A program made the position numbers and the translations under genes. From assembly GCA_965235115.1 (NCBI GenBank), contig OZ249436.1:9610001-9674000 (forward strand): a DNA stretch of 64,000 bases. Reading direction: 5' to 3'. Numbering within the stretch: the first letter of the stretch is position 1; each line of letters opens with the position of its first letter. The notes under the pieces are model-generated. The model worked only from the letters and a program-made list of their open reading frames with translations, did not search any database and was not told the DNA's origin. Of this stretch, positions 10,174 through 60,026 are shown one piece after another. The DNA is from Laetmonice hystrix (Eukaryota).

Positions 10174-10269
10174 TCAGTAACGTGCCGTTCCAGGCACTGC
10201 ATGTTTTTTGCAGTAGGGGCGTCCACTCTTGGCGTAGAAACTCTGACCTTCCAAGTTGATCTGGCACGT
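10174..10269 (-). CDS. Gene A terminal exon (end of LIM3)
   Basis: ttacag acceptor; TCQINLEGQSFYAKSGRPYCKKHAMPGTARY*. Confidence 0.9.
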   Translation of the reverse strand, partial: TCQINLEGQSFYAKSGRPYCKKHAVPGTARY

Positions 10270-33365: not shown

Positions 33366-33447
33366 TTAGAGGTCAGAGGTCGCGGCACGATACCGGTCCT
33401 CCTCTAGTGCTGCCCTCTGGGCGCCCGAGACGATATCAGGGTGTTTG
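33366..33447 (-). CDS. Gene B terminal exon ending ...RAATSDL*
   Basis: actttcag acceptor, phase 2 entry; KHPDIVSGAQRAALEEDRYRAATSDL TAA. Confidence 0.75.
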
Positions 33448-36400
33448 CTGAAAGTATCAGGGTCATGTAAGTGAAACAGGAGGATCACGTTTGGCCTGGA
33501 CCGTGGCAGCCATGGCACGAAAAGGTTTTTTTTTTTACCTAAAAACCTTACAAATCGCATGGAAGTGCGCATGTACTTAACATTGCTATGGAAAGAGATT
33601 TTAAAACCCAATTTACTAACATGATCAAATGTCGCCATGCACACATACGTATTTGTAGGCCTACTTATGTGGAGAGAGTCCCTCGGTTGAGCTATTCTAT
33701 TCACTAATTTGGGAAATATGACAAGAAAAACAAAATAATTACACGAGAAGCAACATCAAACAAGGATGTTTCTTTGTGCTGAAGACGTGGCGCCTTACCT
33801 TTCAATTTCATCCAGTTGGCGATCGGCTTGGCTTTGGAAGGTTTCTACAACGTTTTGGGCGGAGTACATTCCGAGCGGGGTGTTGTACTGCTGGGGCATG
33901 AAGACCTTGACCCTGGGGGAGCTTTGCCTGGCCATGGCCGCCTCCTGCTTCCTCTGCTCCTGGTAGGCGGACCGGGGCGGCGGCAGGCCGCTCGAACCTG
34001 CTGGAGGCTCTGCAGGGGGGCACCACAACCAACATCAGTTACTTCATTCTCGTACTTATACCTACATACCACACAACAAGGGCTGTCAGGCCCTATTTGT
34101 CAAGGAATCTCACTCTAAATAAATAAAAAGAATCTGCTGATTCTACAAATATTACTGCATTACTGGTAACGTGCACTTTAATAATTTGACACGAGAGATT
34201 GGATTTCAATTTATGTTGATTTTGGAAGCTTTAGTAATTCTTTGAGCATTATTCGAGAATTTGCCTGGTTAACTTCATAGATCAATCATTTCACTGCCAA
34301 ATTGCCAAATAACTTTGAGAACCGAGTTATTAGGTCTAGTATTCACAACGCCCATATGAAGAACGTACATTGAAGCCCTTTTCATCAAATTTAACAACGC
34401 TATTTCCGGGACAATTATAAAGTTCTCACAAAGTTCCTTAAACTTAATCATTTGCAGCAATTATTAGGAAAATAATTATTGCAATGTCACGATAAACATC
34501 TTAACTTCTATGGGTACACTAGACCAAAAATAAATATGCACACACCACGACTACGATCTACTCTACTTGGGGGAGGCGGATACACACATTAAAGCTACAC
34601 TGGTATGACAGACTTTTCTACTATATCGCTACGAGTGTGGTTTTCAACCTGTGGTTCTTGAACTCACTTCCAAGGGAAATTTCATGTTTTCTAAGAGGAA
34701 CTGAACAGTCACCCGCTTTGTGCAATTATGCCTACCTCTTTTGAAAGGGATGATTTGCAAATAATTATCACCCAAAGTTGAAGCTGAACTCATAGAATAA
34801 TTTGAGGAAAGGAAAACGGCTGGGAACCACTCTTCAAGGGAAAGAAGCAGGCGGTGTTGTGTTAGACAATATCTCTCTTACCTATAGATACACATGTAGT
34901 TTATTGTAGTTAATCAACAATACACTGGGCTAGGTATAGGCTAGTTAGTCAGATCTAATCCACAGTCAATTCTACCGTTCGCTCCTGACTCGGGAGCGAA
35001 GCGAAGAGCCGACCCTGGGTTAGATCTGTCTAACTAGTATAGGCCGGCTTGTGTAGCTTTAACACTGTGTATCTGCGTGATTATGTTATTCAACCAAGAC
35101 TGCTGGCAAACGACAACAAACATGTTCACGCGCTGACTGATAACAAAGTTATACAAATCAAATTAACCTAAGCAGTTTCTTCTCCGAGTTTCTGCGATTA
35201 TCTTGGCATTAATTTTATAACTTTCTATGAATTAACAAAAATACGCAGCGCGTCTCTCCCTTCGGTACTACTTGATTCGGCATGAGTCGACGCAAATCTG
35301 CAAGATCAGAATTTGTTATTACGAATAGTTGGGATAGAGAATATCTCTTTCTTGAATAAACAACATGTCAAAAATGGCAGCTCTCTGCAATAAAATCACA
35401 AATAGTTACAATAATTCGTAAAACTCTAAATAGAGTTTGTGGTCAGTTTCAAACAAGCCTGCCGAGAAGACTCTTGATACTATAGCTGCGAGCTGAGACA
35501 TACTCAAACATCTTTATTAAAAGTTCTGAGTGTCGGTATCAAAGTCCCCTTCCCTCTGAAAGAATAGTAATTTTTACCCTTCATAAAATCATTGACTGAT
35601 CAAACATGACCCCTGTTAACTCCACTCTCGGCTACACTAGTCTTGCCCCCGCAACAGTCAAAGAAGGGCACTTCTGATCTTTTGACGGAAGGAGTTGTGC
35701 ACCTGCTGTATACCTTCTGTGAGAGTAGTGGTCAATGACATCATCAATGTATACAAATAGCGTCGTGCTGATCTCTGACCAGCTGACGAGTCGTCCGTCT
35801 GCACCTAGACAGTGTACTGTGTGAGGGTGACAGGGAGCAGAACATTACCTGGCTCGTTCTCCACCATGCTAGAAAGAACATTGAAGGTTCTGGACTGCAC
35901 TGGACCACGTTGTTCCTCCTCCTTGAGCAAGTCGGCATACTTGTGGTACAGAGCCGACTCTTTGGGTTCCATCTTGGCGGGTTCCTGGGGAGGCTGATCT
36001 GTAATAGGTGGCGGGGGCGGAAGGTTAGGGGCACTCGGCGGCTCGGGCCAGTCTGCAGCTTCCGTATCGGGCGGGAAGTGGGCGGGCGGGGGAGGCGCAG
36101 GGAACTCGGAGGGCATGTACTCGGCCAGCTCCTCGGACGATTCCGACGGCGGTGGGGGCGGGAAGTCATCGGACATGGCGTCCGGTGACCGAGGCTCCCT
36201 CACCGGGGCTCGGTAAGGCTGGAACCCTGAGTTTGTGGACGCTAGGGGAACGCTAGGGGTCTCTCCCTTGGGGCTGACCTTGGTGGTCTCACGGGCAGAA
36301 ACATTGATGGTCGATTTCTTGTTGGCAGATTCATGGACCTGAAATTTGGCTGGTATCCTCAGTCCTTTCCTGGGAGGGTCTGATGAGGAGGGGGAGTCAG

Positions 36401-39400
36401 ATTTGGTAAATTGTCCCGGAATTTTAATTTTTCCTGGTTCTTTAGGTTTGACTTCTTCCTTGTCGCTATCTGAGTTTGTGAATTTTGACGAAATCTTTAT
36501 GGTTGCTCTAGGAGCTTGGTTTATGGTAACCTGGTTTGGTGCAGTGGTGGACGTTTGGAATGTGGAATGCACAACTGAAGCTTTTGCCTGTTTTGCATCA
36601 TTCTCTATTGTGGATGGACTGCCGTGGAACTTGGCTGGAATGTGTACTGTTGGTCTGGGTGGCTCGTTCAATGTTACCGTCATGGGAGCGTTAACTGAAG
36701 GGTCGGACTTTAATGTAGGAGTGACTCTATCTGCAGGTGGTTCTCTTTCACTGGACAAACTTTGGGATTCATTTTCTTTAAACTTGGCAGGAATCGTAAT
36801 GGTTGGCATTAATCCTTCATTTAGGGCGACTGTCTCGGGAGGTTTGGACAGGCTTACTTCTGTAGTTCGCGCTCTTGAAACCACATCGTCATTAGATACC
36901 TTGGGAGCTATGTGCAATGTGGCTCTTGGTGCCTCATTCAGGGTGGCTGTGGTGGAATACGTGGACGGTAGGCTGGGCTCAGTCTTGGCGGGAATATGGA
37001 TGGACGCTCTGGGTGGTGCAGATATAGTATCTGAGGAGGTTTCAGTTTGTAAGACTTTCCCTGAGTGTGTCCCTGCTATGTGACCATTGGATGGCTTGAC
37101 GTGTTGGGACATGGGGCTGATGTTGATGGTTGCTCTTGGGGCCTCGCTCACTACGTGCGTTGTGTGCGACGTTTGCGCAGTGTGGATATTTGATGGCCAC
37201 TCAATTTTGGCTTGTGGTGATTTGTTAACAATACGGGGTGCAGGGTCTGTCTGAGTTTGGGGTGCCTGAAACTTGGCTGTCAGCTCAACCACAGATCTAG
37301 CGGGCTGGGAATTTGTACCCGTGTGGCCATTGTCAATAGCGGCGAAGGTGTCGCTTGGTTTGTATAGCGGGGACGGGTCGACCATGCCTTGGGATGGATC
37401 ACCTACAGTAACGTCCAGGTTCATGGTCGGGGCCTCGGAACCGTTTCTATAGGACACGTCATTGGTGATCTGAATGGTGGGACGGTTCTTTCCAACCACC
37501 ACGGTAGACATGTACCTACTCGGAGTACCGTCTGACCCAGGCGGGGTGGGACTCGCTGACTCCCGAATGACGGCGCTGGCGGGAGAAGGGTTGGGGGGCA
37601 TAGTGACAGAAGGTTTGGGGGTCATACTGACAGGTTTGGGGGTCATAGTGACAGAAGCTTTGGGGGTCATAGTGACAGAAGGTTTGGGGGTCATACTGAC
37701 AGAGGTGATGGGTGGCGGAGCCGGTGTCCTGTCCAATAAGGACCCTGAGCCTGTGGAGCTGCTGGTTAGAACCGGGGGCGTGTACGGTTTGGGAATGGGT
37801 CTGTACAGGGACTGCTTTGGCGTAACACCGGTGGAGAATCTCCTTTCTGGTTCAGTTAGTAGTTTGGGCTGGACACCTGTGGAGTGTCGGCGTGCTTCAT
37901 CATCAGGTGTGATGGCACTTAGAACGGGTGAGGACCGTTCCTGCTGCTGTGGTGTTAGGACTTTGGGAGGACAGGTGGCTGTGGTGGGTGGAGGGGGTAC
38001 GGGGTCCTCAATGACTCGGCCCACTACGGGTTTACTGGTCTTGGAGGGCGGGTGGTTAGGTCGGCCATACAGTTTCTCCTCTTCATCCATCTGTTTGACA
38101 AGCCGCATGGTTTCAGATGCTATGTATGGTTTAGGGCCGGAGGGACTGCTGTGAAAAAGCACACAAACAAACCACAAATATAACTCATGCATGTTAATAA
38201 AACTCTCCAAACGTGAGAAGTCCATGTATGTAATATGAGAATCAGAAATCTTTAAATTTTACAAACGGGCATTAATTTATAGGACCTTCATGATCTCAGA
38301 TCTTGATAAAAGGAGAGTTTGTTTTGTTACAGCTTCGATCTAAGGTTACCGAATAAAACTCTGGGTTTTTAAAAAACAGGAATTGCACAATTCCTGATTA
38401 TTTGAAAGTCTAGGACATGTATGACGTCACGGGTGTCTTTTTCTGAACGCTAATTTGGAGGCTATGACCTTCAAAGTTAAGGGACTGCGTAGGCGACTGT
38501 TGTCATATAAAAATCAATGCATGGACTTCAGTAAATGTTATCACCAACTATCAAACTAGGGTAAATAAGTCACTCTGTATGGCAGACTCCACAGTTTTCC
38601 ATTGACTCACACATTTCAGGGATGAAAGTGAAGGGTGCCAGTTTTCGTTTGACGATAAAGAGATGGGCTGGCCCTGTGGCTACAACCAGTAATACCATCT
38701 CATAGGAACTGCACGCATCGGAAACGGCAGGGTAGAATTCTGGGATGGCATTAAGTCCCAAATTTGATCAAAAGTTTTCAAAAGCTAGGCATTTGTCTTG
38801 TACCACTATGCACCTAGCACTTTAATTTCTGAAACATGACGTCAATGTGTCAAAATCTTTTAAAAATTATAAAATTATACGTTTTTTTAAATGCTCGTTC
38901 TTCATGCAGGGTGTCACTCCCACACGACCAAAGATGACACACTTGCTGTACTTGCCTTTACTTCATTCTCCGATACGATAAGATACGATACGAGTCGTTT
39001 CCTTCCGTTTTCTGCCTTTCATCGATCCCTGTATTTGAACAAGGATCGCTTTATTCAAGAAACCAAACGTTACAAAATCTCTTACCTGGTCTCTTCCGGT
39101 TTTTGTGCCTCGGGGATGGAGAGTGCCTCCATCTTGTCTCCTACTGTGTCCATGGTAACGTCATGCGAGTAGAGGCCTATGGGACTGTTGAACTGTCTGT
39201 TAGCTATAACCCTGGGGTTGCTGCCTGGGCCCTGGGCTGGCACGTACACTGACGGAGCAGAGGGAGTGACTGGTTGGGGTTTGCGAGCTAACATGACGGG
39301 CGGTGGGGGTTCTCCTGTTAACAACAGCAAGCATGCACATGCATTTTATAAACAATCAACTCCAACAACAGAAACACCAACAATAACGTAACGCAAAGAC

Positions 39401-42400
39401 TGCAATGTGCACTAAATGCAGCAATACTGATCAGTTCAGCAACCTGCAGTGGGGTTGAAAAAGTTCGACATTTTTTAACCATGCTCGTTCCCAGGCCCAC
39501 ACAGTTTAAGGGCAGTGCAGGTTGACCATCTATATAAGGTAAACCACCTACGGGGATACAGAACATGTCAGTTCTGTAGGAGCGCAAGACTGTTTGTAAA
39601 ATAACTTCCCATGGGACTTTCCATAAAACATTACCGCTACACTCAATGGTGACGTAGGGTGAGCAAGACTAGCGGTGGTAGGAGTTATCCATGGATACGG
39701 TGGGATCTATGGCCATGTCTGCCGCATTCCAACAGAGCCACCTGGCGGCTGACCATGACAGCTAAGAGCACATATCTCTACGACCCCATGGTAAAGGACG
39801 AGAAGGGACGCTTCATTCGAGTGTGTGTATCAGGATGGGTCTTATCAACAGTTTACGACTCCTCGCACGCATGACCAAATACTTCAGGCTTCTATATACT
39901 GTGAGGATTGGAGCGGGGACGGTGGGAGTCCATGTCTACTGGAGGGAGGGCTGGCCGGTGGGACTTGTTGACCCTGGATCAAGGTACAGTGGATGATGCA
40001 CAGAAGCCAGAGATACAGGAGCTTCAGACTGCTCAGGGCCACAGGTAACCCACACATGACAATAAACAAAGACGGTAAACATGGACAGGACTGTCCAAGC
40101 CAAACTTCATTATTCACATCAACACGTTATACAAGGAGAAAATTATCTATCTGCAAAAATTCAAAAAACAAATATTTACCTCTCGTAAAGAAAGAGCCTT
40201 GACACTATTCAAAATTTGTTTTCCTTAACCGAAGGCCAAGAGCACATTAGCTCAAGGTTACATATTAGTGACCAGTGCAGTTGTATAATACAGCTCAAAC
40301 CATTGTCCTACATACCCCCACAATGTTGACATGTTTGCTACATAATCCTTCTCTGAATATCATTACTGGTATGTTGCTATTGAAGAACAATATGTAGGAT
40401 TTCGAATTACATAGGTCTCTGAACCGAAGAGTTTGTGTAAACACTAAATTATACTAGGCTGTCTTTGCCTCTAGAAAATATATCTCCATCCCTACCCGAA
40501 GTCTGAACTACCGGATTCAATCCAATCATAATTTAGGAACGTAATTTTCTTGTAAACCATGAAAAGTGTATGGCCTGATGACGCTAAATACTTTGATATA
40601 TCAGCAGTACATTATAATGGAAACCATTGAGAAATCAATGTACAGAAGTTAAGTTTAAGGAGATTTATTTTAAAGGATCCCAGCTTCTGCAGAAACTTTT
40701 CTCTCTTAAGAGTAATTAGTGGATTCACGTGTAAAATATTTACATTGAGGATGCACAGCTGCCAATTGACATAATTTCGGATTGTTAAATTGTTACACAG
40801 GAAAGGATAACCTAGCAAGAATGTTTCACACATATCAACGTTATGAGAACATCTAGTGCCCCAACACAGGCGTTACTGTAGTGCACAACAATATCACCAG
40901 ACAGTGAATGAACAAATAAAGGTAGCATCGTTTAGATATCAGCTACTTACACCAGATCAAGAGAAGGCACGTTTTAGTACTCCAAACAAATGCAGTGCGC
41001 AGCCCAGCAGAGCAACTTTCCAGGGTGGTCTGGTCTTCTACCGACGTTAAACAAGTTGGGCTTTCTACTATATCTTTCTGAGGCCATTTACATTGAGACA
41101 TTTTGACTGGGTTTCTGAGACATTAATTTTGAGGTAGATGGGAAAGGTATTAAGGGCTGATAAAAACCTACCGTCGTTCTCCATCAGGCTCTGGAGTATC
41201 ATGAAGGTACGAGACTGTGTCTGTCCTTGGTCCGAACTGTCATCATCAGCGAATTGCTGGGGAGGGGGCTGGGCAGGCTGTCTGCAACCACACGGCATCG
41301 AGCCTGATCAACACACACACGGGCGGCACACGGTGTGCACACTGTCACACACACAACATGGGTGGCACACAGTGAGCACACACATCCCGGGCGGCGGCAC
41401 ACGGTGTGCACACACCCATTATGTCACGGTACACCGAGTCAGACTCGGAACTAATCCATAAGGAACACTGCGTACTGAAGGCAACTTATTACTAGTCGTA
41501 CACTTGTTATGCAATATTGGTGACCACAACAAGCAACGTGCTGCTACTACTAATGCTCTGTGGACTCGGGAATGGCGGGAAAATAGATTATACAGGGTAT
41601 GTCGGTATACTAGTGGGCATGGGTCGCTTTGGGCGTCACTGGAGAGGGTCGACGGTTAGTTATAATTACTATATATTTCGATTTTCTGTCGAAGGCTGAA
41701 AGAAAAGAGTTTTTTGGTCCTTGGTTTGTTTTACTGTGTCATTGGTATTACTGTGTGTACTGGCGCCTCTCTAGATTTGAAGGACTGTGGGCTAGGCACA
41801 CAGTCTAACTGGTCACCAGGTTCATGTACGATTGGCAATTAGTCCATTAGACGATAATGTGCCGTGAGGAAACAAATCTACAATATAAACAAAGGAAATT
41901 ATCATCACTATAACTGTACTGTGTCTGCAAATAAAAAAATATATAAGAAACAAGGATAAATTAATGTACACAGCTCTACATACCTAAAATGAAACTCAAA
42001 ATTTAGTTTTGCATTATTCGAATGAAAATAAAACATGCATAAACTAAGGAGGGAAAAGGAAACAATAAAAGGCAGCTCCTGCAGGGACGACACTAACATA
42101 GGGGAATCTACTGAAGTCTTGGGTTTAACGCTCAGAGACTGACTCCGAACTGACCCTGAAGGTGTTGCATCAATGTACCTTACACCAATCCGTCACGCCC
42201 CATCAAGTACGCGTGGAATTTGGAGAAAACTAAAGACAGTCCCCTTCAGGATGTTTGGGATGACTTCTGGTTGTTCGCATATTTTCCCGAGTTTGGAATA
42301 TATTATAAACAGCTTTACCTTTTGTCTTTAATGTGATTGTACAATACAAGAGTACAGCACTTTAGTCGACCTACGACACAGAGGTTTCGACCAACTCATG

Positions 42401-45400
42401 ACTGACTTCTACCCTTGAGATAAGTATTGCGTAATCCCCAGGACTTTCCCGACATTTTACTGCCTACAGGGAAGGACATTCTGTGCAACACCTCCCCTTT
42501 TTAATACAAAAAATAAAAACTATTTCCAACAGAACACTAGCTTGTTATGTAACCAACACTGCTATTGACAAGATCCCCTGAATGGATAAAATAGTGTGTA
42601 CGGAGGGTGGATGCATCGGTTTCATTGACACTACAGGGCTTGAAGACCACGATCAAATCCTTTCTTCTACACACAAGCTCTACACAGCTGCACAGAACCA
42701 CATCGGGACCCAGGTGTTCCCTGTCCGCGACATCTTACCCTCATTAGACAAGAGGCTGGCAAGGATGTTGAAGGTTCCCGACTGCCGCACTTCGCCCTGT
42801 CTGTTTTCGGGTTCAAGATGTTGATATTGAGGGTAGTAGGCTTGCCTGAAACGCAACACATACCATGTTAGAACATTATGTGAGAAAATGTGAACGGAAA
42901 TGTGAAAGCCATCACAAAAATCCAAATCCCCGGTGACCACTCAACAGCTGCAGGATTTAGCTTGTTGATTCGCTCTTGTCGTCGTTGCTGTGAAACTGTT
43001 TTTCCGCTGAGTCACTGAAATACCGACATTCGTTTTTATTCCCCCAATATATCAAGGAGATGTACTGAGTTAACCCTGGAGGTCACGGCGACTTGCTGAG
43101 ACATCGCAGGACACCCGTTGATATAAAGACAAGACAGTCTGATGAATCCACACTCGTGAGCAGGATCCCTCTACCTCTGGCGGTGACATCGAGCCCAGTC
43201 ATCACAGGCTGTCTATCACAGCAACTGATCCAACTGATCTGAAAGATAATCAACCAGCAGGTCTCCACAACACCCGCCCAGCACACGGGCAGCTGCCTAC
43301 ATCTCTTACCTTCGTGTTCCAGAAAACTACGGACGACATTGAATGAGCCGGACTGGACGGGACCCGCCTTGCTGAGGGCCTCGGCTGGGATAAACACCTG
43401 GTAGTGACACTGGGGGGACCTGGAATCACCACACCTGGCTACAGACGAGCCATCATGGGGCAGTTATATGGGCTCCCTGGTTTATTACGTCACCTCTCCA
43501 TCTAAATCACTTGTATTGATTGATGTCAGTCTGACACGTATTTCTAAATCACTTGTATTGATTGATGTCTGTCTGACACATATTTCTAAATCACTTGTTT
43601 TGATTGATGTCAGTCTGACACGTATTTCTAAATCACTTGTATTGATTGATGTCAGTCTGACACGTATTTCTAAATCACTTGTATTGATTGATGTCAGGCT
43701 GACACGTATTTCTAAATCACTTGTTTTGATTGATGTCAGTCTGACACATATTTCTAAATCACTTGTTTTGATTGATGTCAGTCTGGCACGTATTTCTAAA
43801 TCACTTGTATTGATTGATGTCAGTCTGGCACGTATTTCTAAATCACTTGTTTTGATTGATGTCAGTCTGACACATATTTCTAAATCACTTGTATTGATTG
43901 ATGTCAGTCTGACACGTATGTCTAAATCACTTGTATTGATTGATGTTAGTCTGACACGTATTTCTAAATCACTTGTTTTGATTGATGTCAGTCTGACACG
44001 TATTTACACCTCAAACTCTGTCTTTACATCTCGATTACTCTGAGCTTCAATCATCCCCAAACAGTCTCAGTGGCAATCACATTTCTTTCTCCAGGTATAT
44101 TAAATACAAATGCCATTAGTTCGATTATAATCAATCGTTTTGTGGTGGTATCCTTTTCTAATCCATGAAACAATTTCTTCTATTCGATATTTTTCCACAT
44201 GTTGCAGACTGCTGGTTGGTACCAGTACCCAGTTCTGCACACAAAACTAGCCAGGTGATGCTCAATCCGCCAGGTGGCAGGTCAGCGTTACTGCCGTTAA
44301 TTTTATCATCGCCTGTAATTTACACCCGAGGTCGACAGTCCAGAGCATCCCTGAATCAACTCTTAATGTAACAATAATCATCGAAAATTTACGCCTGCAA
44401 TAAAATGATAATATCACAATATTACAAAGATATTTAATATGTTTTGATTAATCTTAACTGATGCAATTTAATTTTCATAAATTAAGTTTTCCAAAGTACA
44501 AAATTATTTGAAAGTTTCTGAACTTTGAGAAACCTTAAAACTTACCCAACCATCATAAATAACTCTTTTGCCACTGTTATTTTTATGTAAACAATACCCA
44601 GGAGAGTGTTTGCATGGACCCCGTTGAGATAAATGGAGGCTATTTGTAGTGGTAGGCCCCGTTACTGTCGGTGTCGGGGGTGAGAAGAGTACTTACTGTG
44701 GGCTGGACCTGTAGTGTGGCTCAGGCTGGACGGCGGCGGGTGGCGGCTGAGGCCGTGTGCTGGGAGGCTCGAACGGTCGGGCCGTGGCTCTGTGAAACTC
44801 CTGCGGCTGCTGGTAGGTCTGCGTGGGGGGAGAGAGAGAAAACAGGCGCCCTGTTCACCAGTACAGATACATGGTAATGCCCTCATATAGGGCTCCTCGT
44901 GTGTATACTTCCCAGGTTTAGCTCTGGATATCTTGAAATCTCTGCGATTCGTAAACTCTATAAATTCTATTCTGAGGCGGATTTTCAAAAATAAAACTTT
45001 CGGAAACTTCCATGTATAAAAGTTAATGCCGGAGCACCTACACTTGTCTTGTGAAGACGGTTGTGAATAGAGTTACAGGTGACCAGACTACAAGCAACTG
45101 TTTGTCTACTAGTAGTATAGGCTTATTGACTAAGGACTCATACATTTGAATTCATGTGTAAGGTTACCAAATTACAGGGGAAAGGTTCCTTAAAAAGTTA
45201 TCAAATGTGGCCTGTCAGCAATATTTACCACCTAATGGTAATCACTACTCACGATACTGAAAGTAATCCTAAACACACTAGGATTGATCGACTAATTCTT
45301 CCCACGGTAGGAGGTAATTAAGTAACATCGAATTATATCTGTGAAGGTTAATCATTCATTCACCATAACAACGTATGGCTGGTATACAAAACAAGCAATT

Positions 45401-48400
45401 TTTTTTCTGTGCGGGCTTGCATAGCTATTTGGACTAAAACTTTTACCAAATGAAAAAATAATTGGTCGTGGCTGTGCAGGGGAAGGTGTTCCAGATTTCT
45501 GTGCGACTATACATTGCTGGTGAGGTCCGTTTAGTAACTTCCCCACGTATTAGCAGAGACAACACTGTTACAGCAATGCCCTTATAACAGTGCTGGTCCT
45601 CGGCCCCAACAGCAAATAACGCTCTCGCAAGGATTACATGGTCAGACGCAACCCTACGCCAAGGTCAACAGTCTGTCTGGTTGTCACCTTGATAGAAATG
45701 CTGCCAGGTAGCAAGCAATAAAAACATTCGATCATGACTCCGCTAAACATGTCGGAGATAAACTTGAATTGGTTTCCACCGCCAACGGTGCAAACCCATG
45801 TTGATTGCGTTTATACCTTCTGAAATAACGAAATGCATAGTTCTTTCAGACTGAACAGTAAATGTCTTGGGGTATTTCAGAAAGGGAAAATCTTATATAA
45901 CTATATGCTAATTCTTATGCACCGATACTGCTTTCAAAATGAAATGTCTGGAGATACTTGTCGAAATCTAATGTTGCCAAAAAAATGACAGAGGATATAA
46001 ATAGTTCTTCTCGTGTATTCTCGACACGATGTGTACTGTATTAATTCACTGTGAATCATTCCTGGCCTTTAATTCCCTATATCTCTATGTTATATTCAGT
46101 CACATTGTCAGTCACAGTCCATACAGTCTGGATGCTGTTCTTCCAAACTGTACCTATCATCAGAGAGATTCACCGACACACGCTATGAACAGGTTCAGAT
46201 CATTCGTAATGTATAATACTGGCTCCATATACTGACATATGCATTGAATTACGTCTACTTGGTCCCTTTGATTGAAAGCGTTTTTTGTAATTATGTACAG
46301 ACACGTGTAGTTTTCAGGTGATCAGGTCGATGACAACGGAAGGTAAAACACAACAAGAAGCCAAGCGAACACACGAGCCTACAGACGTGGCCACCAGATG
46401 TGGCTCGGTCAGGGCTCAGCCTTGACTTGCCTGCTGGGGTCCGTGGTGGCTGGGGGCTGCTGACGGATCCGACCCTGCTGGGGCCATTGGAGTGACGGTG
46501 TCCGGGCCTGTGGGATGGAGCTGGCCTGGGGCCTGGGGATGGTCCTGGGACTGGGGGGCACTACGAGTAGGGTTTCTCATTCCTCCATCTATGGGAGCGA
46601 AGGTTGAGGGTATGTACTGACCATCGGGACTCGTTGGGGCAGCAGATACAGGAGTGGGTCGTGCGGGTTCACTAGAGTAACTCGGCGGAGCGTAGGGCCT
46701 TGGGACAGATGGGACTCCCTCGGGAGGTGGAGGCCCTGCTGTCTGCCTGGTCGGGTTCCTGAGGCCTCCGTCAATAAGGGAGACCGCTGGAGGCGAGTAC
46801 TGTTCTTCATCACCTGGGGAGACACCAGGGGCAGCTGGAGCATATGGGGCGAGCATCATGGCATCTGTCTCCAGGGTGGTCATCTGGGGCTCGTAAGGGG
46901 ATGGGTGGATGGGGCCGTACTGCCTGCCTGGGGTGTTGTCTACTCCTGAAGGACCTTCTGGCCGTCTGTAACTGGGCTGAGGCCGAGGGGCGGGGATATA
47001 GACCGGGATCCCCCCAGCCAGCTCCATGCCGACAGTATAACCCCTGTCACTAAAACCTTTCTATAACAGGTCAGTCAGGAGGAACAGAACAGAACGGAAC
47101 ATAAGAACAATGGCTTCCAGGTAAAGGGTTAACATAGATTAGAGTAACACATGGACTATAGGAGAATTAAACTAAAATAGCTGGGAATCTGGATATTCAT
47201 AACCTATTTGATTTTTAAAAGTGTGTTTGGTACGAGAAATATATGTGGAAGAAATATTAAATACTGTGACTGAACAGCTGAAGGATATATGCCAAAGAAT
47301 CAAGTTTATTAATTACGTTTTCCTTCAATATGTACGCCAATATAGATCTATCATAAAAAGTGTTGATAAAGTGATTAATTGTGATATCATTGTCAACAGA
47401 GAGCAAAGCATAGCCACTTAATTATACCTAAGTTTCCAATTATTCATATTTTTGAATTATTAATACATCGTTCAAGCCATATTTCTTTCATTACTTGTGC
47501 ATCACTTGTACATGTTTAACGGTATTGGCGAATAACTAAGATACAACGATCAATATGTAAACACTACAGCTAGAACCGCTAGAACATACGTCACACAGCT
47601 GGGGCCTGTTCAGCGTGCTCCAAGACAAACAACTACGATGTCTAAGGTGCCAACGCCATTGGCAACTAATGTTTCTAAAGAAAAAAAGCCAGACATCATT
47701 TCATCACAGCAATACAATCACATTTATGCGTGTAATTATTAATGTCGTGATGCATTTAAGTTTTGTAACATATCTATCATGCTTTCTACAGAAAAGAGTT
47801 TTAGTTTTGTTGGTTTGAAATTCAACACTTTTTAAAACTGGATAATATGATTTGAATGATACTATAAATTATAAGATACTGCACCGAATGTCCCAAGACG
47901 GTTCTGCGTTTGCTTCATCCCCTTTATTCCCAAATAAGGTCATTGCATCCTGATGACACACACTAATAAAATGGTGGTTCTTCCTGAACTATTCCACATC
48001 GTAACATTACGACGAAAACGTCAGCCCTCCCTCACCCGAGCACAATGTTATCCTCAACATCCCCTCTGAGTCATCCTCAAACACACACACACCATTGTAT
48101 CAATCTCCTAATGACATTTTGGAATATGTCCCTCCGGGAGCACCAAACCCATGCCAATAGAAAGAATGACTCGGAGTATGTTCAGTGTCTATCATGTCAG
48201 TACAATTATTACACGAAACACCTGCTCTCAACCAGGTCAGTATTACACGTTGGTGCATTGTGTGTCCGACAAAACGTCACCCTGTACACACACACACACT
48301 TAATTACCACTAACTCAATGTGAAATGTGCTCTGGGTGAATTAAACAACCAGATCATAATCATGCGCCTGGATGTCTGAGAACACTAATGTCCATATACC

Positions 48401-51400: not shown

Positions 51401-54400
51401 TTAAGCTTAAGCAAGATCTTAAGTTTTTACGAACTGGTCTGACGAAAGGGACTTGTTTGATAAATACGTTTATGAATATGTGTCCAGACTTCAAATCTCC
51501 CGGAGCTGCCGGAATGTGTTGGGATCATTGTGCCTTCTGGAAAATTTGGCCAGGCTGATTGCAGAAACATAGGACGGCTTCGAAATAAAAAATTATCTCA
51601 TACCCATTATCAAAACATATGTCCAAGTAACATTAAAGAAGCATAGTCATAAGCACCCCATTCGCATTCTTGGAGCAGGTTGACATTATGTTTGTAGCTT
51701 GCCCCCTCTTGCCGGGTAACAACAAAATTGCAATTCAGAAAAAAAATTGTAAATTTAAAACCGTAAACTAAATATTATGCTAGTGTGTGGAGAACAGCTG
51801 AATGTTTTCGGAGGGAGTTGTGTTTGGAGTGAGCCTGATCCCTCCGTACTGACTCGATGACTGGTTGACTTGGCCATTATCTGACGGTGGTAGCCGTGAA
51901 GCCGGCAGGCAGGTAACATGAGTAGGGCCGACCTAAAAATGGTGCCACCGGGAACATATAAACACTAGCACAGCTGACATGGTTGCCAACCCCTGTACGA
52001 CTGGCCCTCCTCCCCTGCCAGCCTCACATCAACGTTGATATACGAGTGATACGGCAACACTGGACCTCGTCAAGGTGTCCAAGCCAATCCACGTTATACT
52101 CCAAACATTGGCCACAGTTCTACTATTAAAATTAATGCTGACATGTCTCCAAACTATATCTTCAACTTTTATGTCTTAATTCTTACACCGATATATTGCA
52201 ATACTATTTTTCCGGAAATATGTTTTTTCAAATCTAAAAAGAAATAAAGCGCATCTCTTCGGTCTTTTTTCAACAGGTAATATACAACGTCAGTCATAAA
52301 CATTTTAATAAACTCGTCTGCTCTCGGTACCAATATATAAAGCTCTACTGACAGGAAGTGCTTCCTCTTTGGAGAGGTAATCAGCAATAAGATGTCTGTA
52401 CCTTACCAGGGGGTAGACGTAAGAAAAATGCTAAAGTTATATGCAACATGGCAACGTATTCCAGCTGGATGTAGGCCCTATAAACAGAACCCCCTATACG
52501 AAGCCTGCCATAGCCACTTCAGTGAACAACCGTGTACCAGTGGCCTGTGTACTCACACAGTATAGATTGAACGCTGTACTCGAGTTCTGCCCTCAAAGTC
52601 AAAAAATGTACATCAAAGGCCGTAGGCCTAATCATCTGCTGACCTAGAAACCCATTTCCACATACGAAGATTGCTCAAGTATTCTCACCAATATTTTAAT
52701 TGAAAAGTTCATTGGCACCATTGGATATTATGAATCTGTATAATTTGTAATAACTTGATGTTCGAGCATGGTATTCGCAGATATAGTTTGTGAATGTATT
52801 TCCCGACCGTGGTCCGTTCCATCCAGGCCAGTGTTGGCGTGAACACGTATACTGAGATGGGCTCCCATCAACAGGTGCTCCCTGGGGGTGGCGGGTAGGG
52901 GTGTTCTCACTCCCGGTTACCGGCGCTGGCAGGTGGGGCGAGTGAGGCTGGAGAGTGGGCCAGACCTCCAACTATCCCCTAGTAACAGTAACCTTGGTGG
53001 TCTGACCTTTACTGTGGCCTTGCCACGCAAAAACCTCAATGACAATACAGGAACCATCAAACATGGTTCCAGCTGAAACAGGCATACAGACCAATCAAAA
53101 CTGAGGCCAAAGAAAAAAGGCCTTTCCATGTTTTCCTACTTGTCTGTTATGAAGATAAATATGGGGTCAAATAAGAGCATTCTCCTGAATATTGTCAAAT
53201 ATACATGATCGTCATTGCCGGTTAAGGACTGCGGCCTTTCCAAACAAACTCGATAAAATCTGACATTGTCCACGACGTGTCTCCGTCACCAATCCACGCA
53301 AACAAACTCGGTCCGACTGACGTCAACAGCGCCCCCTATAGTGTGGTCAGACTGGACCGGACAGTGTTTTTGATTACTTTAATTAGCGGTCGTAGATAGA
53401 TTAGCCGCGTTGTATTCAGACAAGTGATATACAACCATTTCATCTACAATTTAAGACCCTCAAGATTGGCTTGATTTTGCTCGCGCTCCACATGATTAAA
53501 TTTCAGGATTGCAGCTTGCGAAATCTGAACTTTTCCTTTACCCTAAACACATCCAATACGTACTACGGGCGTAATCTGTATTTATTATTTCCAGCGTATC
53601 AAATCACGTTATTGACGACCTTGATAACATTTTTCCAAACGTATATTATTTCCAGCGTATCAAATCACGTTATTGACGACCTTGATAACATTTTCCCAAA
53701 CGTATAGGATTACTTCCAGCTTATCAAATCAAATTATTGCCGATCTTGATAACATTTTTCCAAACGTATCCGGCAGGACACAGCTTGAAAAGTACAACAC
53801 CACGTGACGTCCTGGTATTTCTTTCACCAGCTGCACCTTTAACAATCCTTTTTCAAATGCCAACGTGACTCAACTGCTACAATCTGAGGCTCCAGTTCCT
53901 TGCCAGAATTAAACATATTAGTCCAGACTACATCTAAGGTTATATACTCCTCATAATAATATCTACGGATCTCAGGTCAAACAGAAATAGAGGATAAGGA
54001 AAGAGAATGAACTCACAGGGTTACGTGGGTGAGAGGAGGCTCCGGTAAGGTCGTACATATCGTATCCCCTGCCAGGTTGACCTGAGGGACTCTGCGAGCT
54101 GATCACTGGGTTCTGGGGTACTGCTCCATGGGCCGGTCTGAAACAACCACATTTAACTGGTTATGGATGGCCATTCTACTCCACACCTATTTCTTCCCCT
54201 TTTTAGATTTGATAAAGTTATACATGTACAACAATATCGTCCGGAGACCTGGGAGAAAGATCAGAAACGGTTGAGGGCTATTCCCCAGCACTTGTTTACA
54301 TCAACAGCTGTTTATAGTTGCGGTAATGACAGTTTAGTGGTGTGATGATACAATCAGGGCCCTCATCCAGCTGTTCAGGCAGTCAACAGTCACCTTCACC

Positions 54401-55124
54401 ACCCAACAACAAGCTGACAACATCTCCTCTCAGCTCCCCACATTCTACTTCACCGAAAAAAAATATCAACTAAACTTGTTGAGATCATGCGATTGTTGGG
54501 GTACCAAACTATACAGCAAACATCTCTTTTTATAGAGGGAATAACAGAGAACAAAATGGGTCCAACAAAATGACGCTTACAAAGGTACATTGTGACGGAG
54601 GTACAGGGTAAGTTTCATTAAGTTAGTGGGTAAGAATCAGAAGAACTAATCCCTGATCCGGAGTACTGTGGCCGAAAAGTACAAACATTATTGGCTCGTC
54701 AATTTCGCTACTCCCGTCAAATGTTACTACTCGGTTCGTCGATTTCGATCCTCGGCTCGCAGATTTCGGTACTCGGGTCCAATGTCCCGAGTACCGAATT
54801 TTGCGACCCGTGTAGCAACATTGGACCCGAGTACCCAAATCTGCGAGCCGAGGATCGATATCGATTAACCGAGTAGCAACATCTGACCGGAGTAGCGATA
54901 TTTGTGAATCCTCCAGCCAAGAATGTTTGTACCTTTCGGCCACAGTACTACTGTGACGTTTTGCGGACTCACCTCTCCACAGTGAGGATCATGGTCTGTC
55001 CGTACTGGGTGATGGCGTTAGAAGCCTGTCCGTGCGTCCAGAACCGTGTCTTCTTGTCACCTATCTCCGTCACCTCGTCCCCAGATCGCAGACCGATCCT
55101 TGCCGCAGGACTGCCCGGTGTGAC
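33366..55124 (-). CDS. Gene B: LIM-less PDZ-ZM (Zasp/ALP-family) protein, 5' incomplete, alternatively spliced
   Basis: PDZ exon 55124-54973, then 54137-54017, 44818-44697, one of (43419-43310, 42845-42739, 41281-41172), 39314-39086, 38148-35849, 34009-33799 and 33447-33366. All phases are compatible; 3327 nt with a 110-nt alternative exon. Two ZM motifs, several QSxxF motifs, no LIM. Confidence 0.85.
33799..34009 (-). CDS. Gene B second ZM exon
   Basis: RVKVFMPQQYNTPLGMYSAQNVVETFQSQ; ctgcag acceptor, gtaagg donor; phase 1 to 2. Confidence 0.92.
34921..35055. mobile_element. Short MITE-like foldback element
   Basis: Imperfect terminal inverted repeats tacac..ctagttagtcagatctaatcc / gggttagatctgtctaactag..gtgta around an internal hairpin ttcgctcc-tgactc-gggagcgaa. 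Confidence 0.55.
35849..38148 (-). CDS. Gene B giant 2300-nt exon (Pro/Ser/Thr-rich, bracketed by AM half-motifs)
   Basis: 766 open codons; tttttcacag acceptor, gtaatg donor; phase 2 to 1. Starts SPSGPKPYIASETMRLVKQMDEEE and ends GPVQSRTFNVLSSMVENEP. Confidence 0.9.
39086..39314 (-). CDS. Gene B first ZM exon
   Basis: PRVIANRQFNSPIGLYSHDVTMDTV; taacag acceptor, gtaaga donor; phase 1 to 2. Confidence 0.92.
41172..41281 (-). CDS. Gene B alternative exon c (QSRTFMILQSLMENDG)
   Basis: 110 nt; ttgcag acceptor, gtaggt donor; phase 2 to 1. Confidence 0.82.
42739..42845 (-). CDS. Gene B alternative exon b (QSGTFNILASLLSNEG)
   Basis: 107 nt; gtttcag acceptor, gtaaga donor; phase 2 to 1. Confidence 0.82.
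43310..43419 (-). CDS. Gene B alternative exon a (QSGSFNVVRSFLEHEG)
   Basis: gtaaga donor, phase 1 exit. Acceptor attccag gives 110 nt with phase 2 entry; the alternative acceptor at 43434 gives 125 nt in the same phase. Confidence 0.72.
43500..44005. repeat. 42-bp intronic minisatellite, ~12 copies
   Basis: Unit tctaaatcacttgtattgattgatgtcagtctgacacgtatt; gives a 14-aa periodic ORF SKSLVLIDVSLTRI. Confidence 0.96.
44697..44818 (-). CDS. Gene B exon TYQQPQEFHRATARPFEPP...
   Basis: Strong tctctctctcccccacgcag acceptor, gtaagt donor; phase 0 to 2; the ARPF motif parallels gene A exon 4. Confidence 0.85.
46431..47043 (-). CDS. Gene B 613-nt Pro/Tyr-rich alternative exon with GC donor
   Basis: Open frame GYTVGMELAGGIPVYIP...HHGPQQ; gtgacag acceptor (phase 2); CAG/GCAAGT donor (phase 0) matches the next exon. 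Confidence 0.72.
49539..49618 (-). CDS. Gene B candidate internal first exon (PDZ-less isoform)
   Basis: ATG-initiated MALNETGLAEGRPWHAECTRWIYLSG followed by a perfect GG/gtaagt donor; phase 2 fits the exon at 47043. Confidence 0.45.
51296..51441. mobile_element. Palindromic MITE-like element with (cttaag)n arms
   Basis: ccagttcttaaaaaattaag..cttaagcttaag..cttctgattggctg / cagccaatcagaag..ttaagcttaag..cttaagtttttacgaactgg. Confidence 0.7.
53590..53770. repeat. Three ~61-64-bp tandem copies
   Basis: ccagcgtatcaaatcacgttattgacgaccttgataacatttttccaaacgta at 53591, 53652 and 53716. Confidence 0.9.
54017..54137 (-). CDS. Gene B post-PDZ linker exon
   Basis: PAHGAVPQNPVISSQSPSGQPGRGYDMYDLTGASSHPRNP; gtttcag acceptor, gtgagt donor; phase 2 to 0, like gene A exon 3. 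Confidence 0.78.
54666..54945. mobile_element. Tc1/mariner-type MITE (280-bp foldback, TA target duplication)
   Basis: TA|CTGTGGCCGAAAAGTACAAACATT ... AATGTTTGTACCTTTCGGCCACAG|TA, with extensive internal inverted symmetry. Confidence 0.8.
54973..55124 (-). CDS. Gene B PDZ C-terminal-half exon
   Basis: VTPGSPAARIGLRSGDEVTEIGDKKTRFWTHGQASNAITQYGQTMILTVE; gacag acceptor, gtgagt donor; 152 nt, phase 0 to 2, same length and phase as gene A exon 2. Not shown in the ORF track. Confidence 0.9.
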
Positions 55125-59127: not shown

Positions 59128-60026
59128 TTTTTCAGTTACTTGTTGTAAGGTCAGTAGTTCCCCCCGGGATACCCCGGTTTTTCAGTTACTTGTTGTAAGG
59201 TCAGTGGTTCCCCCAGGATACCCCGCTTTATCAGTTACTTGTTGTAAGGTCAGTAGTTCCCCCCGGGATACCCCAGTTCTTCAGTTACTTGTTGTAAGGT
59301 CATTGGTTCCCCCGGGATACCTCGGTTTTTCAGTTACTTGTTGTAAGGCCAGTGGTCCCCCCGGGATACCTCGGTTTTTCAGTTACTTGTTGTAAGGTCA
59401 GTGGTTCCCCCTGGGATACCCCGGTTTTTCAGTTACTTGTTGTAAGGTCAGTGGTTCCCCCCGGGATACGCCGATTTTTCAGTTACTTGTTGTAAGGTCA
59501 GTGGTTCGCCCCGGGATACCCCGGTTTTTCAGTTACTTGTTGTAAGGTCAGTGGTTCCCCCCGGGATACCCCGGTTTTTCACTACTTGTTGTAAGGTCAG
59601 TGGCTCCCCCCGGGATACCCCGGTTTTTCAGTTACTTGTTGTAAGGTCAGTAGTTCCCCCCGGGATACCCCGGTTTTTCAGTTACTTGTTGTAAGGTCAG
59701 TGGTTCCCCCAGGATACCCCAGTTTTTCAGTTACTTGTTGTAAGGTCAGTGGTTCCCCCCGGGATACCCCGGTTTTTCATTTACTTGTTGTAAGGTCAGT
59801 GGTTCCCCCCGGGATACCCCAGTTTTTCAGTTACTTGTTGTAAGGTCAGTGGTTCCCCCCGGGATACCCCGGTTTTTCATTTACTTGTTGTAAGGTCAGT
59901 GGTTCCCCCCGGGATACCCCGGTTTTTCATTTACTTGTTGTAAGGTCAGTGGTTCCCCCCGGGATACCCCGGTTTTTCATTTACTTGTTGTAAGGTCAGT
60001 GGTTCCCCACAGGATACCCCGGTTTC
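59128..60026. repeat. 49-50-bp minisatellite, ~18 copies, probably amplified from a SINE interior
   Basis: Unit tttttcagttacttgttgtaaggtcagtggttccccccgggataccccggt; the last copy continues ccggtttcctcccgctaaaactga. Confidence 0.95.

What the first reader, a model, noticed from the sequence alone, without database searches (positions are those of the whole stretch)
41172..43434. Three-way mutually exclusive exon cassette encoding variants of the QSxxF (AM) motif
Exons of 110, 107 and 110 nt each enter in phase 2, exit in phase 1 and end in a homologous motif: QSGSFNVVRSFLEHEG, QSGTFNILASLLSNEG and QSRTFMILQSLMENDG. They lie between an exon exiting in phase 2 (44697) and one entering in phase 1 (39314). 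Including zero, two or three of them breaks the frame, so exactly one must be chosen. This duplicated-exon switch for a Z-disc motif is, as far as I recall, undescribed in this family and would give muscle-type-specific variants. It is the strongest candidate for a new system in the window.
Basis: partly seen in the sequence, partly recalled or inferred. Interest (0 to 1): 0.82.

Follow-up and report, generated by a model that had tools for sequence, protein, structure and literature searches.

The report
Three alternative exons in ZASP-like gene
A muscle-scaffold (ZASP-like, PDZ-domain) gene of an unnamed invertebrate carries three duplicated small exons; RNA from the sequenced animal uses each as an alternative version of one short protein motif, a solid but fairly ordinary case of a known splicing trick.

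Summary
On the minus strand lie three homologous exons, A 43419-43310, B 42845-42739 and C 41281-41172 (110, 107 and 110 nt). All have AG/GT splice sites, enter in phase 2 and leave in phase 1, and each ends in a QSxxFxxL motif.

Run X4 comes from the same specimen and behaves as RNA. It joins each exon directly to the same upstream donor (44697). It shows no A-B, B-C or A-C joint.

All three exons, with the same order, phases and 1:1:1 orthology, are kept in a relative (L001) whose introns no longer align. Two more distant relatives have only one such exon, so the triplication is lineage-specific.

The model is too simple, though. Exon B is spliced to 34009, and exon C to 39314 or to an internal acceptor at 35998.

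The gene is a ZASP-like paralog with a PDZ domain and a predicted stop before any LIM exon. It lies upstream of a canonical PDZ-ZM-LIM gene.

Substitution of homologous exons is already known in this family (LDB3, PDLIM3, Zasp52), so this is a new member of a known kind. I found no docking/selector RNA pairing. Tissue specificity is untested.

The parts
54973..55124 (-). PDZ-domain exon of the gene that carries the cassette (gene 1). It encodes VTPGSPAARIGLRSGDEV... and, by prediction, runs from phase 0 to phase 2.
   Evidence: Pfam PDZ E=6e-8 and PDZ_6 E=1e-8 on the ORF 54972-55127. Boundaries read from the sequence. A possible preceding PDZ exon at 55247-55194 is tentative.
54017..54137 (-). 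Linker exon directly upstream of exon 44818 in the RNA.
   Evidence: The loose end of RNA contig 31 behind 44818 maps to 54017-54046 and is followed by a GT donor. The acceptor at 54137 is read from the sequence.
44697..44818 (-). Upstream exon shared by all three alternatives (122 nt). It ends in phase 2 with CA, so any of the three exons completes a Gln codon.
   Evidence: RNA contig 31 covers 44697-44818 at depth 67. An ortholog in L001 at 1765-1892 is 128 nt and also ends in CA.
43501..44005 (.). 42-nt minisatellite (12 copies) in the intron between the shared exon and exon A.
   Evidence: DNA contigs collapse or break there. No role has been shown.
43310..43419 (-). Alternative exon A (110 nt, phase 2 to 1), ending in ...GPVQSGSFNVVRSFLEHE.
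   Evidence: The RNA joint 44697>43419 has depth 31.5 and is absent from the DNA runs. The ortholog in L001 at 3055-3179 is 125 nt with the same phases.
42739..42845 (-). Alternative exon B (107 nt, phase 2 to 1), ending in ...VRQSGTFNILASLLSNE.
   Evidence: The RNA joint 44697>42845 has depth 32.3. The same contig continues from 42739 into the exon that starts at 34009. The ortholog in L001 at 4724-4833 is 110 nt, with 25 of 35 residues identical.
41172..41281 (-). Alternative exon C (110 nt, phase 2 to 1), ending in ...TQSRTFMILQSLMEND.
   Evidence: RNA joints 44697>41281 (depth 24.7) and 41172>39314 (depth 24.4), plus a second continuation to 35998. The ortholog in L001 at 6522-6640 is 119 nt (end corrected by 1 nt).
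39086..39314 (-). ZM-motif exon 1 (229 nt, phase 1 to 2), containing RQFNSPIGLYS.
   Evidence: Pfam DUF4749 scores 29.8 bits against a cut-off of 28.7, on profile positions 2-40. The acceptor is confirmed by the RNA joint from exon C. The donor is predicted. Two GCATG sites lie 22 and 28 nt upstream and are conserved in L001 and L002.
35849..38148 (-). Large predicted exon (2300 nt, proline- and serine-rich). Its last 150 nt (35998-35849) can be used as a separate exon through an internal acceptor and encode a fourth copy of the motif (...GPVQSRTFNVLSSMVENEP).
   Evidence: ORF 35808-38258 has homologs P0001 (55% identity) and P0002. The internal acceptor at 35998 is shown by the RNA loose end from exon C. 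Outer boundaries are read from the sequence. No RNA evidence was obtained for the long form.
33799..34009 (-). ZM-motif exon 2 (211 nt, enters in phase 1), containing PQQYNTPLGMYS.
   Evidence: The acceptor at 34009 is shown by the RNA loose end from exon B. Pfam DUF4749 scores 27.5 bits. The exon is widely conserved as an ORF in relatives.
33366..33447 (-). Predicted last coding exon of gene 1, ending ...AATSDL followed by a stop.
   Evidence: Read from the sequence. The stop position is conserved in L001, which ends ...SSSDF followed by a stop. Not confirmed by RNA.

Best explanation
The three exons are tandem duplicates of one ancestral exon, used as mutually exclusive alternatives in a ZASP-like Z-disc scaffold gene that has a PDZ domain and a predicted stop before any LIM exon.

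Shown here:
- Each exon is spliced directly to the donor at 44697.
- No exon is seen joined to another.
- Each encodes a different version of a roughly 36-residue segment: a variable part rich in aromatic, acidic or proline residues, followed by QS-x-[ST]-F-x-[IVL][LV]-x-S-[LF].

Inferred:
- Exclusivity is enforced mainly by reading frame. Each exon is 2 mod 3 in length, so two or three in a row give premature stops and the transcripts would be removed by nonsense-mediated decay.
- The choice among the exons is made by trans-acting splicing factors, not by competing RNA helices.
- The choice may be linked to what follows. In this sample B goes to the second ZM exon (34009). C goes to the first ZM exon (39314) or to the fourth motif copy (35998).
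- The variants tune how the disordered internal region of the protein docks on a Z-disc partner, or how it is phosphorylated. This is by analogy with the alpha-actinin-binding internal region of ALP.
For: RNA:
- Run X4 comes from the same sample as DNA runs X1-X3. It covers only the predicted exons.
- It has GT..AG joints 44697>43419, 44697>42845, 44697>41281 and 41172>39314, at depths 31.5, 32.3, 24.7 and 24.4. None of these joints occurs in the three DNA runs.
- The contigs run unbroken from the shared exon into A, B or C.
- The three depths sum to about 88, against 67 for the shared exon.
- No joint between two cassette exons and no joint that skips all three is listed.

Frame: only single inclusion is open before 39314.

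Conservation:
- L001 has the same order and phases, with lengths 125, 110 and 119 nt, all 2 mod 3 (C' corrected from 120 to 119 nt on the sequence).
- Similarity scores give 1:1:1 orthology.
- Introns cannot be aligned.
- Nonsynonymous differences are 0.37, 0.19 and 0.29. Synonymous differences are 0.73, 0.59 and 0.79. The neighbouring exons behave the same way.

Origin: more distant relatives L004 and L006 have a single exon of the same phase class directly before the ZM2-type exon.

Uniqueness: the genome holds only these copies.
Against: - There is only one RNA data set, from an unknown tissue, held as assembled contigs. Contigs show presence, not absence, so rare co-inclusion cannot be excluded.
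- The record does not state that X4 is RNA. That is inferred from its behaviour.
- Exon A's downstream partner was not seen. Its contig ends 7 nt past the exon.
- The three exons do not share one downstream acceptor, unlike a textbook cluster.
- No regulator, no conserved flanking intron element and no functional datum for the motif variants was found.
- The match to the vertebrate motif is weak (hhalign probability 21%).
Confidence: 0.75

Rival explanations
1. Exclusivity is set by competing RNA secondary structure, as in Dscam1 exon 6 or 14-3-3 xi. In that model one docking site pairs with a selector next to each alternative exon.
For: A 15-nt stretch of the shared exon (44753-44767) is 14 of 15 complementary to 43274-43288, which lies 21-35 nt downstream of exon A. 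A 12-bp helix with two G-U pairs links the shared exon to a site 36-48 nt downstream of exon B.
Against: No single site pairs with sequences beside all three exons. About one perfect 12-mer is expected by chance in the space searched, by my own estimate, and two were found. Nothing comparable exists in L001. No intron sequence flanking A, B or C is conserved between the two species beyond about 24 nt after exon B.
Confidence: 0.06
2. The exons act mainly as a dosage valve. Frequent double inclusion or skipping yields transcripts with premature stops that are degraded, so the cluster tunes the amount of protein rather than its sequence.
For: Every combination other than single inclusion gives a premature stop before exon 39314. 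Contigs would not show degraded or rare forms.
Against: All three peptides are conserved at the protein level while silent sites are saturated, and length changes come in multiples of three. The three single-inclusion forms have similar depth, and together they account for the depth of the shared exon.
Confidence: 0.1
3. Only one exon is functional and the others are decaying duplicates or splicing noise.
For: None was found.
Against: All three are in RNA at similar depth. All three keep open frames, splice sites and phases in a relative with unalignable introns.
Confidence: 0.02
4. The joints in X4 are artefacts: assembly chimeras, or a run that is not RNA.
For: The kind of run is not on record ('?'). 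The data are contigs of 140-165 nt with only about 30 nt on the shorter side of each joint.
Against: All four joints fall exactly on the predicted AG/GT boundaries. They are absent from three DNA runs of the same sample. Coverage is confined to exons. The loose ends map to further predicted acceptors and donors at 35998, 34009 and 54017.
Confidence: 0.03

Closest known systems
Homologous-exon substitution in vertebrate LDB3/ZASP (exon 4 versus exons 5-7) and PDLIM3/ALP
   Same: It is the same protein family and the same internal region between PDZ and the C-terminus. Remotely homologous alternative exons are swapped to give muscle-type isoforms (PMC4465641, PMC6279932).
   Different: By my reading, the vertebrate switch swaps the exon carrying the ZM motif (QYNxPxxLYS). 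It is two-way, with one exon against a block of exons. RBM20, which the cited review calls vertebrate-specific, controls the Ldb3 switch (PMC6279932). Here the swapped segment carries the QSxxFxxL motif, the switch is three-way, and the ZM exons are separate.
Drosophila Zasp52, Zasp66 and Zasp67
   Same: Zasp52 is listed among genes with mutually exclusive exons (PMC3303723). Zasp66 shares the PDZ domain and ZM motif with Zasp52 and has at least 13 annotated transcripts, and Zasp67 shares the same two motifs (PMC3591300). This resembles gene 1 here, which lies next to a canonical PDZ-ZM-LIM gene.
   Different: I could not establish which Zasp52 exons are exclusive or whether they carry this motif. 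Orthology to the fly genes was not tested. That Zasp66 and Zasp67 lack LIM domains is from my own knowledge, not from a passage I read. In gene 1 the absence of LIM rests on a predicted stop at 33366.
Classical clusters of mutually exclusive exons from tandem duplication (criteria of PMC3228551; Dscam1, tropomyosin, alpha-actinin)
   Same: The exons are neighbours of similar length and the same phase, with sequence homology. One is used per transcript, and the frame breaks on multiple inclusion.
   Different: There is no shared downstream acceptor. Exon choice appears linked to different downstream exons. No competing RNA structure was detected.
ALP-like motif (AM) of te Velthuis et al. 2007 (PMC1781342), and the C-terminal half of Pfam DUF4749
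   Same: It is a short conserved segment in the internal region with a possible kinase site. hhalign places the cassette profile on RAANLQSKSFRILAHITGT of a vertebrate ZASP-like model. The related exon of the neighbouring gene hits DUF4749 positions 50-90.
   Different: The paper describes AM as specific to the vertebrate ALP subfamily and encoded by exon 5. The matches here are below threshold, so identity with AM is a resemblance and not a demonstrated membership.

Membership tests
Cluster of mutually exclusive exons (criteria named in the title of PMC3228551: exon length, splice-site and reading-frame conservation, sequence homology) | Neighbouring internal exons of similar length on one strand | tested here: met
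   The exons are 110, 107 and 110 nt within 2.25 kb of the minus strand.
Cluster of mutually exclusive exons | Same splice-site type and the same reading-frame phase at both ends | tested here: met
   All have AG/GT sites, enter in phase 2 and leave in phase 1. The same holds for the three orthologs in L001.
Cluster of mutually exclusive exons | Sequence homology between the exons | tested here: met
   They share the QS..F core, with 11-14 of 36 residues identical between pairs. A profile of them finds only these copies in the genome.
Cluster of mutually exclusive exons | Each exon is used, and each is spliced to the common upstream exon | tested here: met
   There are three RNA joints from 44697 to 43419, 42845 and 41281.
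Cluster of mutually exclusive exons | Two of the exons never occur in one mature transcript | tested here: inconclusive
   No A-B, B-C or A-C joint appears in X4, and the contigs run unbroken from the shared exon into each. Contigs of one sample cannot prove absence.
Cluster of mutually exclusive exons | A common downstream exon | tested here: not met
   B continues to 34009. C continues to 39314 and to 35998. A's partner was not seen.
Docking/selector RNA competition (Dscam1 type) | One docking site complementary to a selector beside every alternative exon, conserved in relatives | tested here: not met
   Only isolated helices at the level expected by chance were found, and none is shared with L001.
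ALP/Enigma (PDZ-LIM) family | N-terminal PDZ domain | tested here: met
   The exon at 55124-54973 hits Pfam PDZ. It is linked to the cassette through the exon ending at 54017 in RNA. The first half of the PDZ domain is only tentatively placed.
ALP/Enigma (PDZ-LIM) family | ZM motif (Pfam DUF4749) | tested here: met
   Exon 39314-39086 scores 29.8 bits against a cut-off of 28.7. Exon 34009-33799 scores 27.5 bits.
ALP/Enigma (PDZ-LIM) family | C-terminal LIM domain or domains | tested here: not met
   The predicted stop at 33366 is conserved in L001 and comes before any LIM exon. The LIM exons at 11601-10150 follow a second PDZ start at about 29.3 kb. Gene 1 is therefore filed as a ZASP-like paralog with no LIM exon before its predicted stop. 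Splicing through to the LIM exons was not excluded by RNA.
ALP-like motif (AM; PMC1781342) | A 34-residue motif with two predicted helices and a PKC-type site, specific to the ALP subfamily | tested here: inconclusive
   hhalign against a vertebrate ZASP-like model aligns 19 columns on QSKSFRIL, with probability 21% and E 0.001. The exons alone give no Pfam hit. There is no solved structure.

The most novel reading that the evidence does not exclude
The cassette may be half of a coupled switch. In that reading the choice of motif exon dictates which downstream module follows: B with the second ZM exon, C with the first ZM exon or with the fourth motif copy. The gene would then produce matched motif-ZM pairs by long-range coordinated splicing.

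The protein would also lack LIM domains and end in a conserved S-D-L or S-D-F tail, of the class that PDZ domains of this family bind on alpha-actinin. If so, the isoforms could differ in how they chain or cap Z-disc scaffolds.
Probability: 0.15. Interest if true: 0.55.

Novelty: new member of a known kind. Interest (0 to 1): 0.35.

Why it matters
The function of the QSxxFxxL segment of ALP/Enigma proteins is not known. Here nature offers three conserved, expressed variants of it in one gene, beside relatives that have only one. That gives a ready-made comparison for binding or phosphorylation tests with Z-disc partners.

The locus also documents a dated, lineage-specific exon triplication that became an alternative-splicing cluster in an invertebrate outside the usual model organisms. 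The triplication is absent in two relatives and present in at least one.

It does not reveal a new mechanism.

Tried and rejected
- RNA runs. Two searches listed no run on record as RNA. X4 was recognised as RNA only by its behaviour when laid on the window.
- Annotated isoforms in relatives. The large-exon search gave only two unannotated ORFs. The exhaustive search with the ZM1 exon gave only ORFs and one vertebrate model. A profile of the cassette ORFs found nothing in the 5.8-billion collection. The cassette ORFs of L001 are not among the called genes, which may explain this.
- Closest relatives. The contig of the closest relative (P0001) and that of P0028 could not be read because the sample file is too large.
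- Spliced transcripts. The ZM2 ORF hits are all genomic ORFs, not spliced transcripts.
- L003 is the other haplotype of L001 or a near copy (97-99% identical) and was not counted as independent.
- Docking/selector search: nothing beyond chance, and nothing conserved.
- Rbfox-type GCATG sites are not enriched beside A, B or C. The sites about 700 nt after exon B in both species have unrelated flanks.
- Pfam on the single exons gave no hit. There is no solved structure.
- The organism could not be named with these tools.
Full report
**What is in the sequence.**
The finding lies on the minus strand. Reading that strand gives three exons:
- A, 43419-43310 (110 nt)
- B, 42845-42739 (107 nt)
- C, 41281-41172 (110 nt)

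Each is preceded by AG and followed by GT. Each consists of one base, 35 or 36 codons, and one base.

The exon 44818-44697 (122 nt) ends with two bases, CA. Any of the three exons therefore completes a Gln codon. The exon 39314-39086 enters needing two bases and carries a ZM motif, RQFNSPIGLYS. Pfam DUF4749 scores it at 29.8 bits, above the cut-off.

Joining 44818-44697 to 39314 with none, two or three of the exons gives premature stops. Joining with exactly one gives an open frame.

**RNA evidence.**
Two searches for sequencing runs listed only runs of one sample, none on record as RNA. One of them, X4, has only 59 Mb of contigs yet holds the 229-nt ZM exon.

Laid on 39040-44860 together with three DNA runs of the same sample, X4 covers only the predicted exons, plus two depth-2 pieces of intron. 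It shows four joints with GT..AG ends that none of the DNA runs has:

| Joint | Depth |
|---|---|
| 44697>43419 | 31.5 |
| 44697>42845 | 32.3 |
| 44697>41281 | 24.7 |
| 41172>39314 | 24.4 |

- The contigs run unbroken from 30-31 nt of the shared exon through A, B or C.
- No joint between two of the three exons is listed, and none that skips all three.
- The shared exon's contig has depth 67, against a sum of 88 for the three. Contig depth is a poor measure, but the figures fit one exon per transcript at broadly similar levels.

I take X4 to be RNA of the sequenced animal. This is an inference from its behaviour, not from its record.

**Where the loose ends go.**
- Exon B's contig continues into the exon starting at 34009, preceded by ...ctgcag. 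This is a second ZM exon (PQQYNTPLGMYS).
- Exon C has a second continuation to 35998, preceded by ...ttacag. This acceptor lies inside the large ORF 35808-38258.
- From 35998 a 150-nt exon (to 35849) encodes a fourth copy of the motif...GPVQSRTFNVLSSMVENEP. It enters and leaves in phase 1.
- Upstream, the shared exon is joined to an exon ending at 54017, not to the proline-rich ORF at 46419-47060.
- All three downstream acceptors (39314, 35998, 34009) accept phase 1, so each observed junction is in frame.
- Exon A's contig ends 7 nt past the exon, so its partner is unknown.

A cassette exon plus exon 39314 together total 339 or 336 nt. Skipping both to the predicted acceptor at 38148 would stay in frame. 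No such joint was seen.

**The gene.**
There are two PDZ starts on this strand:
- 55124-54973, which hits Pfam PDZ at 6e-8
- about 29300 plus 28140-27988, with the canonical PWGFRMYGG

The cassette belongs to the upstream gene, which runs as follows:
1. PDZ exon
2. Exon 54137-54017
3. Exon 44818-44697
4. A, B or C
5. ZM exon 1
6. Large exon, including the fourth motif copy
7. ZM exon 2
8. Predicted terminal exon 33447-33366, ending ...ATSDL followed by a stop

The stop position is conserved in the relative L001, which ends ...SSSDF followed by a stop. No LIM exon precedes that stop. The LIM exons at 11601-10150 follow the second PDZ start.

Gene 1 is thus a ZASP-like paralog with no LIM exon before its predicted stop, lying head-to-tail with a canonical PDZ-ZM-LIM gene. 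RNA was not available to exclude splicing through to the LIM exons.

**Conservation.**
The large exon found two unannotated ORFs, and one gave a readable locus, L001. L001 has, in the same order:
- the shared exon, 128 nt, also ending in CA
- A', 125 nt
- B', 110 nt
- C', 119 nt
- ZM exon 1, the large exon, ZM exon 2 and the terminal exon

All three cassette lengths are 2 mod 3, and all keep AG/GT. Similarity scores pair A with A', B with B' and C with C' (75, 126 and 85, against 14-55 for other pairs).

At the DNA level only exons align between the two species. Synonymous differences are saturated at 0.59-0.79, while nonsynonymous differences are 0.37, 0.19 and 0.29. The constitutive neighbours behave the same way. 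All three exons are therefore under purifying selection, and the triplication predates the split of the two species. L003 is the other haplotype of L001 or a near copy and adds nothing independent.

**Origin.**
A search with the ZM2 ORF found many relatives. Two readable loci are L004, from a genome assembly, and L006, an animal contig in a JGI metagenome. L006 has a gene-1-like PDZ exon.

- Each has a single motif exon, most like C.
- These exons are 104 and 176 nt with the same phases.
- Each lies directly upstream of the ZM2-type exon.
- Neither locus has a first ZM exon or a large exon.

This matches the B-to-34009 junction seen in the RNA. It suggests that the ancestral layout was shared exon, one motif exon, ZM exon. 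The triplication, together with the extra ZM and large exons, would then be specific to one lineage. In the window's own 627-Mb genome the profile finds only A, B, C and the fourth copy.

**Mechanism.**
Shown:
- alternative use from a common donor
- frame incompatibility of multiple inclusion before 39314
- protein-level conservation of each variant

Inferred:
- Transcripts with several exons are removed by nonsense-mediated decay.
- Splicing factors pick the exon.

I looked for docking/selector pairings and found only isolated helices. The best is 14 of 15 bases between 44753-44767 and 43274-43288. These are at about the number I estimate by chance, and none is shared with L001. Introns beside A, B and C carry no conserved element at this distance.

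The only conserved intron element is a pair of GCATG sites 22-30 nt upstream of ZM exon 1. It is present in the window and in L001, and L002 carries one GCATG at about the same distance. This points to regulated use of that exon and fits its skipping after exon B.

The functional effect of the variants is unknown. The closest studied case is the internal region of ALP, which is disordered and forms an extended interface with the alpha-actinin rod (PMC2670261).

**Comparison with what is known.**
- LDB3 and PDLIM3 undergo substitution of remotely homologous exons (PMC4465641). Ldb3 exon 4 against exons 5-7 is treated as mutually exclusive (PMC6279932).
- Zasp52 is listed among fly genes with mutually exclusive exons (PMC3303723).
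- Zasp66 and Zasp67 share the PDZ domain and ZM motif with Zasp52 (PMC3591300).

The kind of device, and its use in this family, are therefore known. Different here are the segment being swapped, the three-way form, and the varied downstream partners.

The label 'AM' is uncertain. The original description restricts that motif to the vertebrate ALP subfamily (PMC1781342). My profile comparison with a vertebrate ZASP-like model aligns to QSKSFRIL only weakly, with probability 21%.

**Verdict.**
This is a real, expressed and conserved three-way set of alternative exons. It is a new member of a known kind, of moderate interest.

Noticed in passing
window 10150-29300, minus strand: A second, canonical PDZ-ZM-LIM gene lies directly downstream of the cassette gene on the same strand. 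Its parts are a PDZ domain (PWGFRMYGG at about 29250, and 28140-27988), ZM exons at 16765-16610 and 15123-14812, a KSKTFKML motif exon within 16202-15645, and three LIM domains at about 12100-10150.
   Followed up: partly
window 39336-39342 and 39342-39346; L001 9027-9035; L002 about 120-130: Two GCATG (Rbfox-type) sites lie 22-30 nt upstream of the first ZM exon's acceptor in both the window and L001. The marine-metagenome scaffold L002 carries one GCATG at about the same distance. This is the only intron stretch that still aligns between the species.
   Followed up: partly
window 33366-33447; L001 about 16182-16280: The predicted C-terminus of the cassette gene is ...TSDL in the window and ...SSDF in the relative. 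This is a class I PDZ-ligand-like tail and recalls, from memory, the ESDL end of alpha-actinin that PDZ domains of this family bind. Binding was not tested.
   Followed up: no
window 35998: An acceptor inside the large 2300-nt exon is used in RNA. The last 150 nt, which carry the fourth motif copy, can therefore be included without the long disordered part.
   Followed up: partly
L004 5830-5934; L006 8647-8822: More distant relatives carry only one motif exon, directly before the ZM2-type exon. The three-exon cluster and the extra ZM and large exons are therefore lineage-specific additions.
   Followed up: partly
window 46419-47060, minus strand: A 214-codon proline-rich open frame lies between the exons at 54017 and 44818. 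The RNA contig that joins those two exons skips it. It may be an alternative exon or no exon at all.
   Followed up: no
window 1-7900: A satellite with an 848-bp unit and a 2543-bp higher-order period. Copies 2543 bp apart are up to 99-100% identical.
   Followed up: partly
window 11503-11970, 17122-17930, 18119-18405, 20245-21316, 43501-44005, 59128-60025: Several intronic minisatellites with units of 42-57 nt and 5-20 copies. The one at 43501-44005 lies in the intron just upstream of exon A.
   Followed up: no
window 41322-41413 and 41415-41716: Three copies of a 21-nt GC-rich, partly palindromic element lie 40-130 nt upstream of exon C. Low-depth (2) RNA contigs cover the intron next to them, which may be unspliced precursor.
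   Followed up: no
window 43274-43288 and 44753-44767: A 15-nt complementarity (14 of 15) links the shared upstream exon to the intron 21-35 nt after exon A. It is not conserved in L001, and the number of such matches is close to my estimate of what chance would give.
   Followed up: yes
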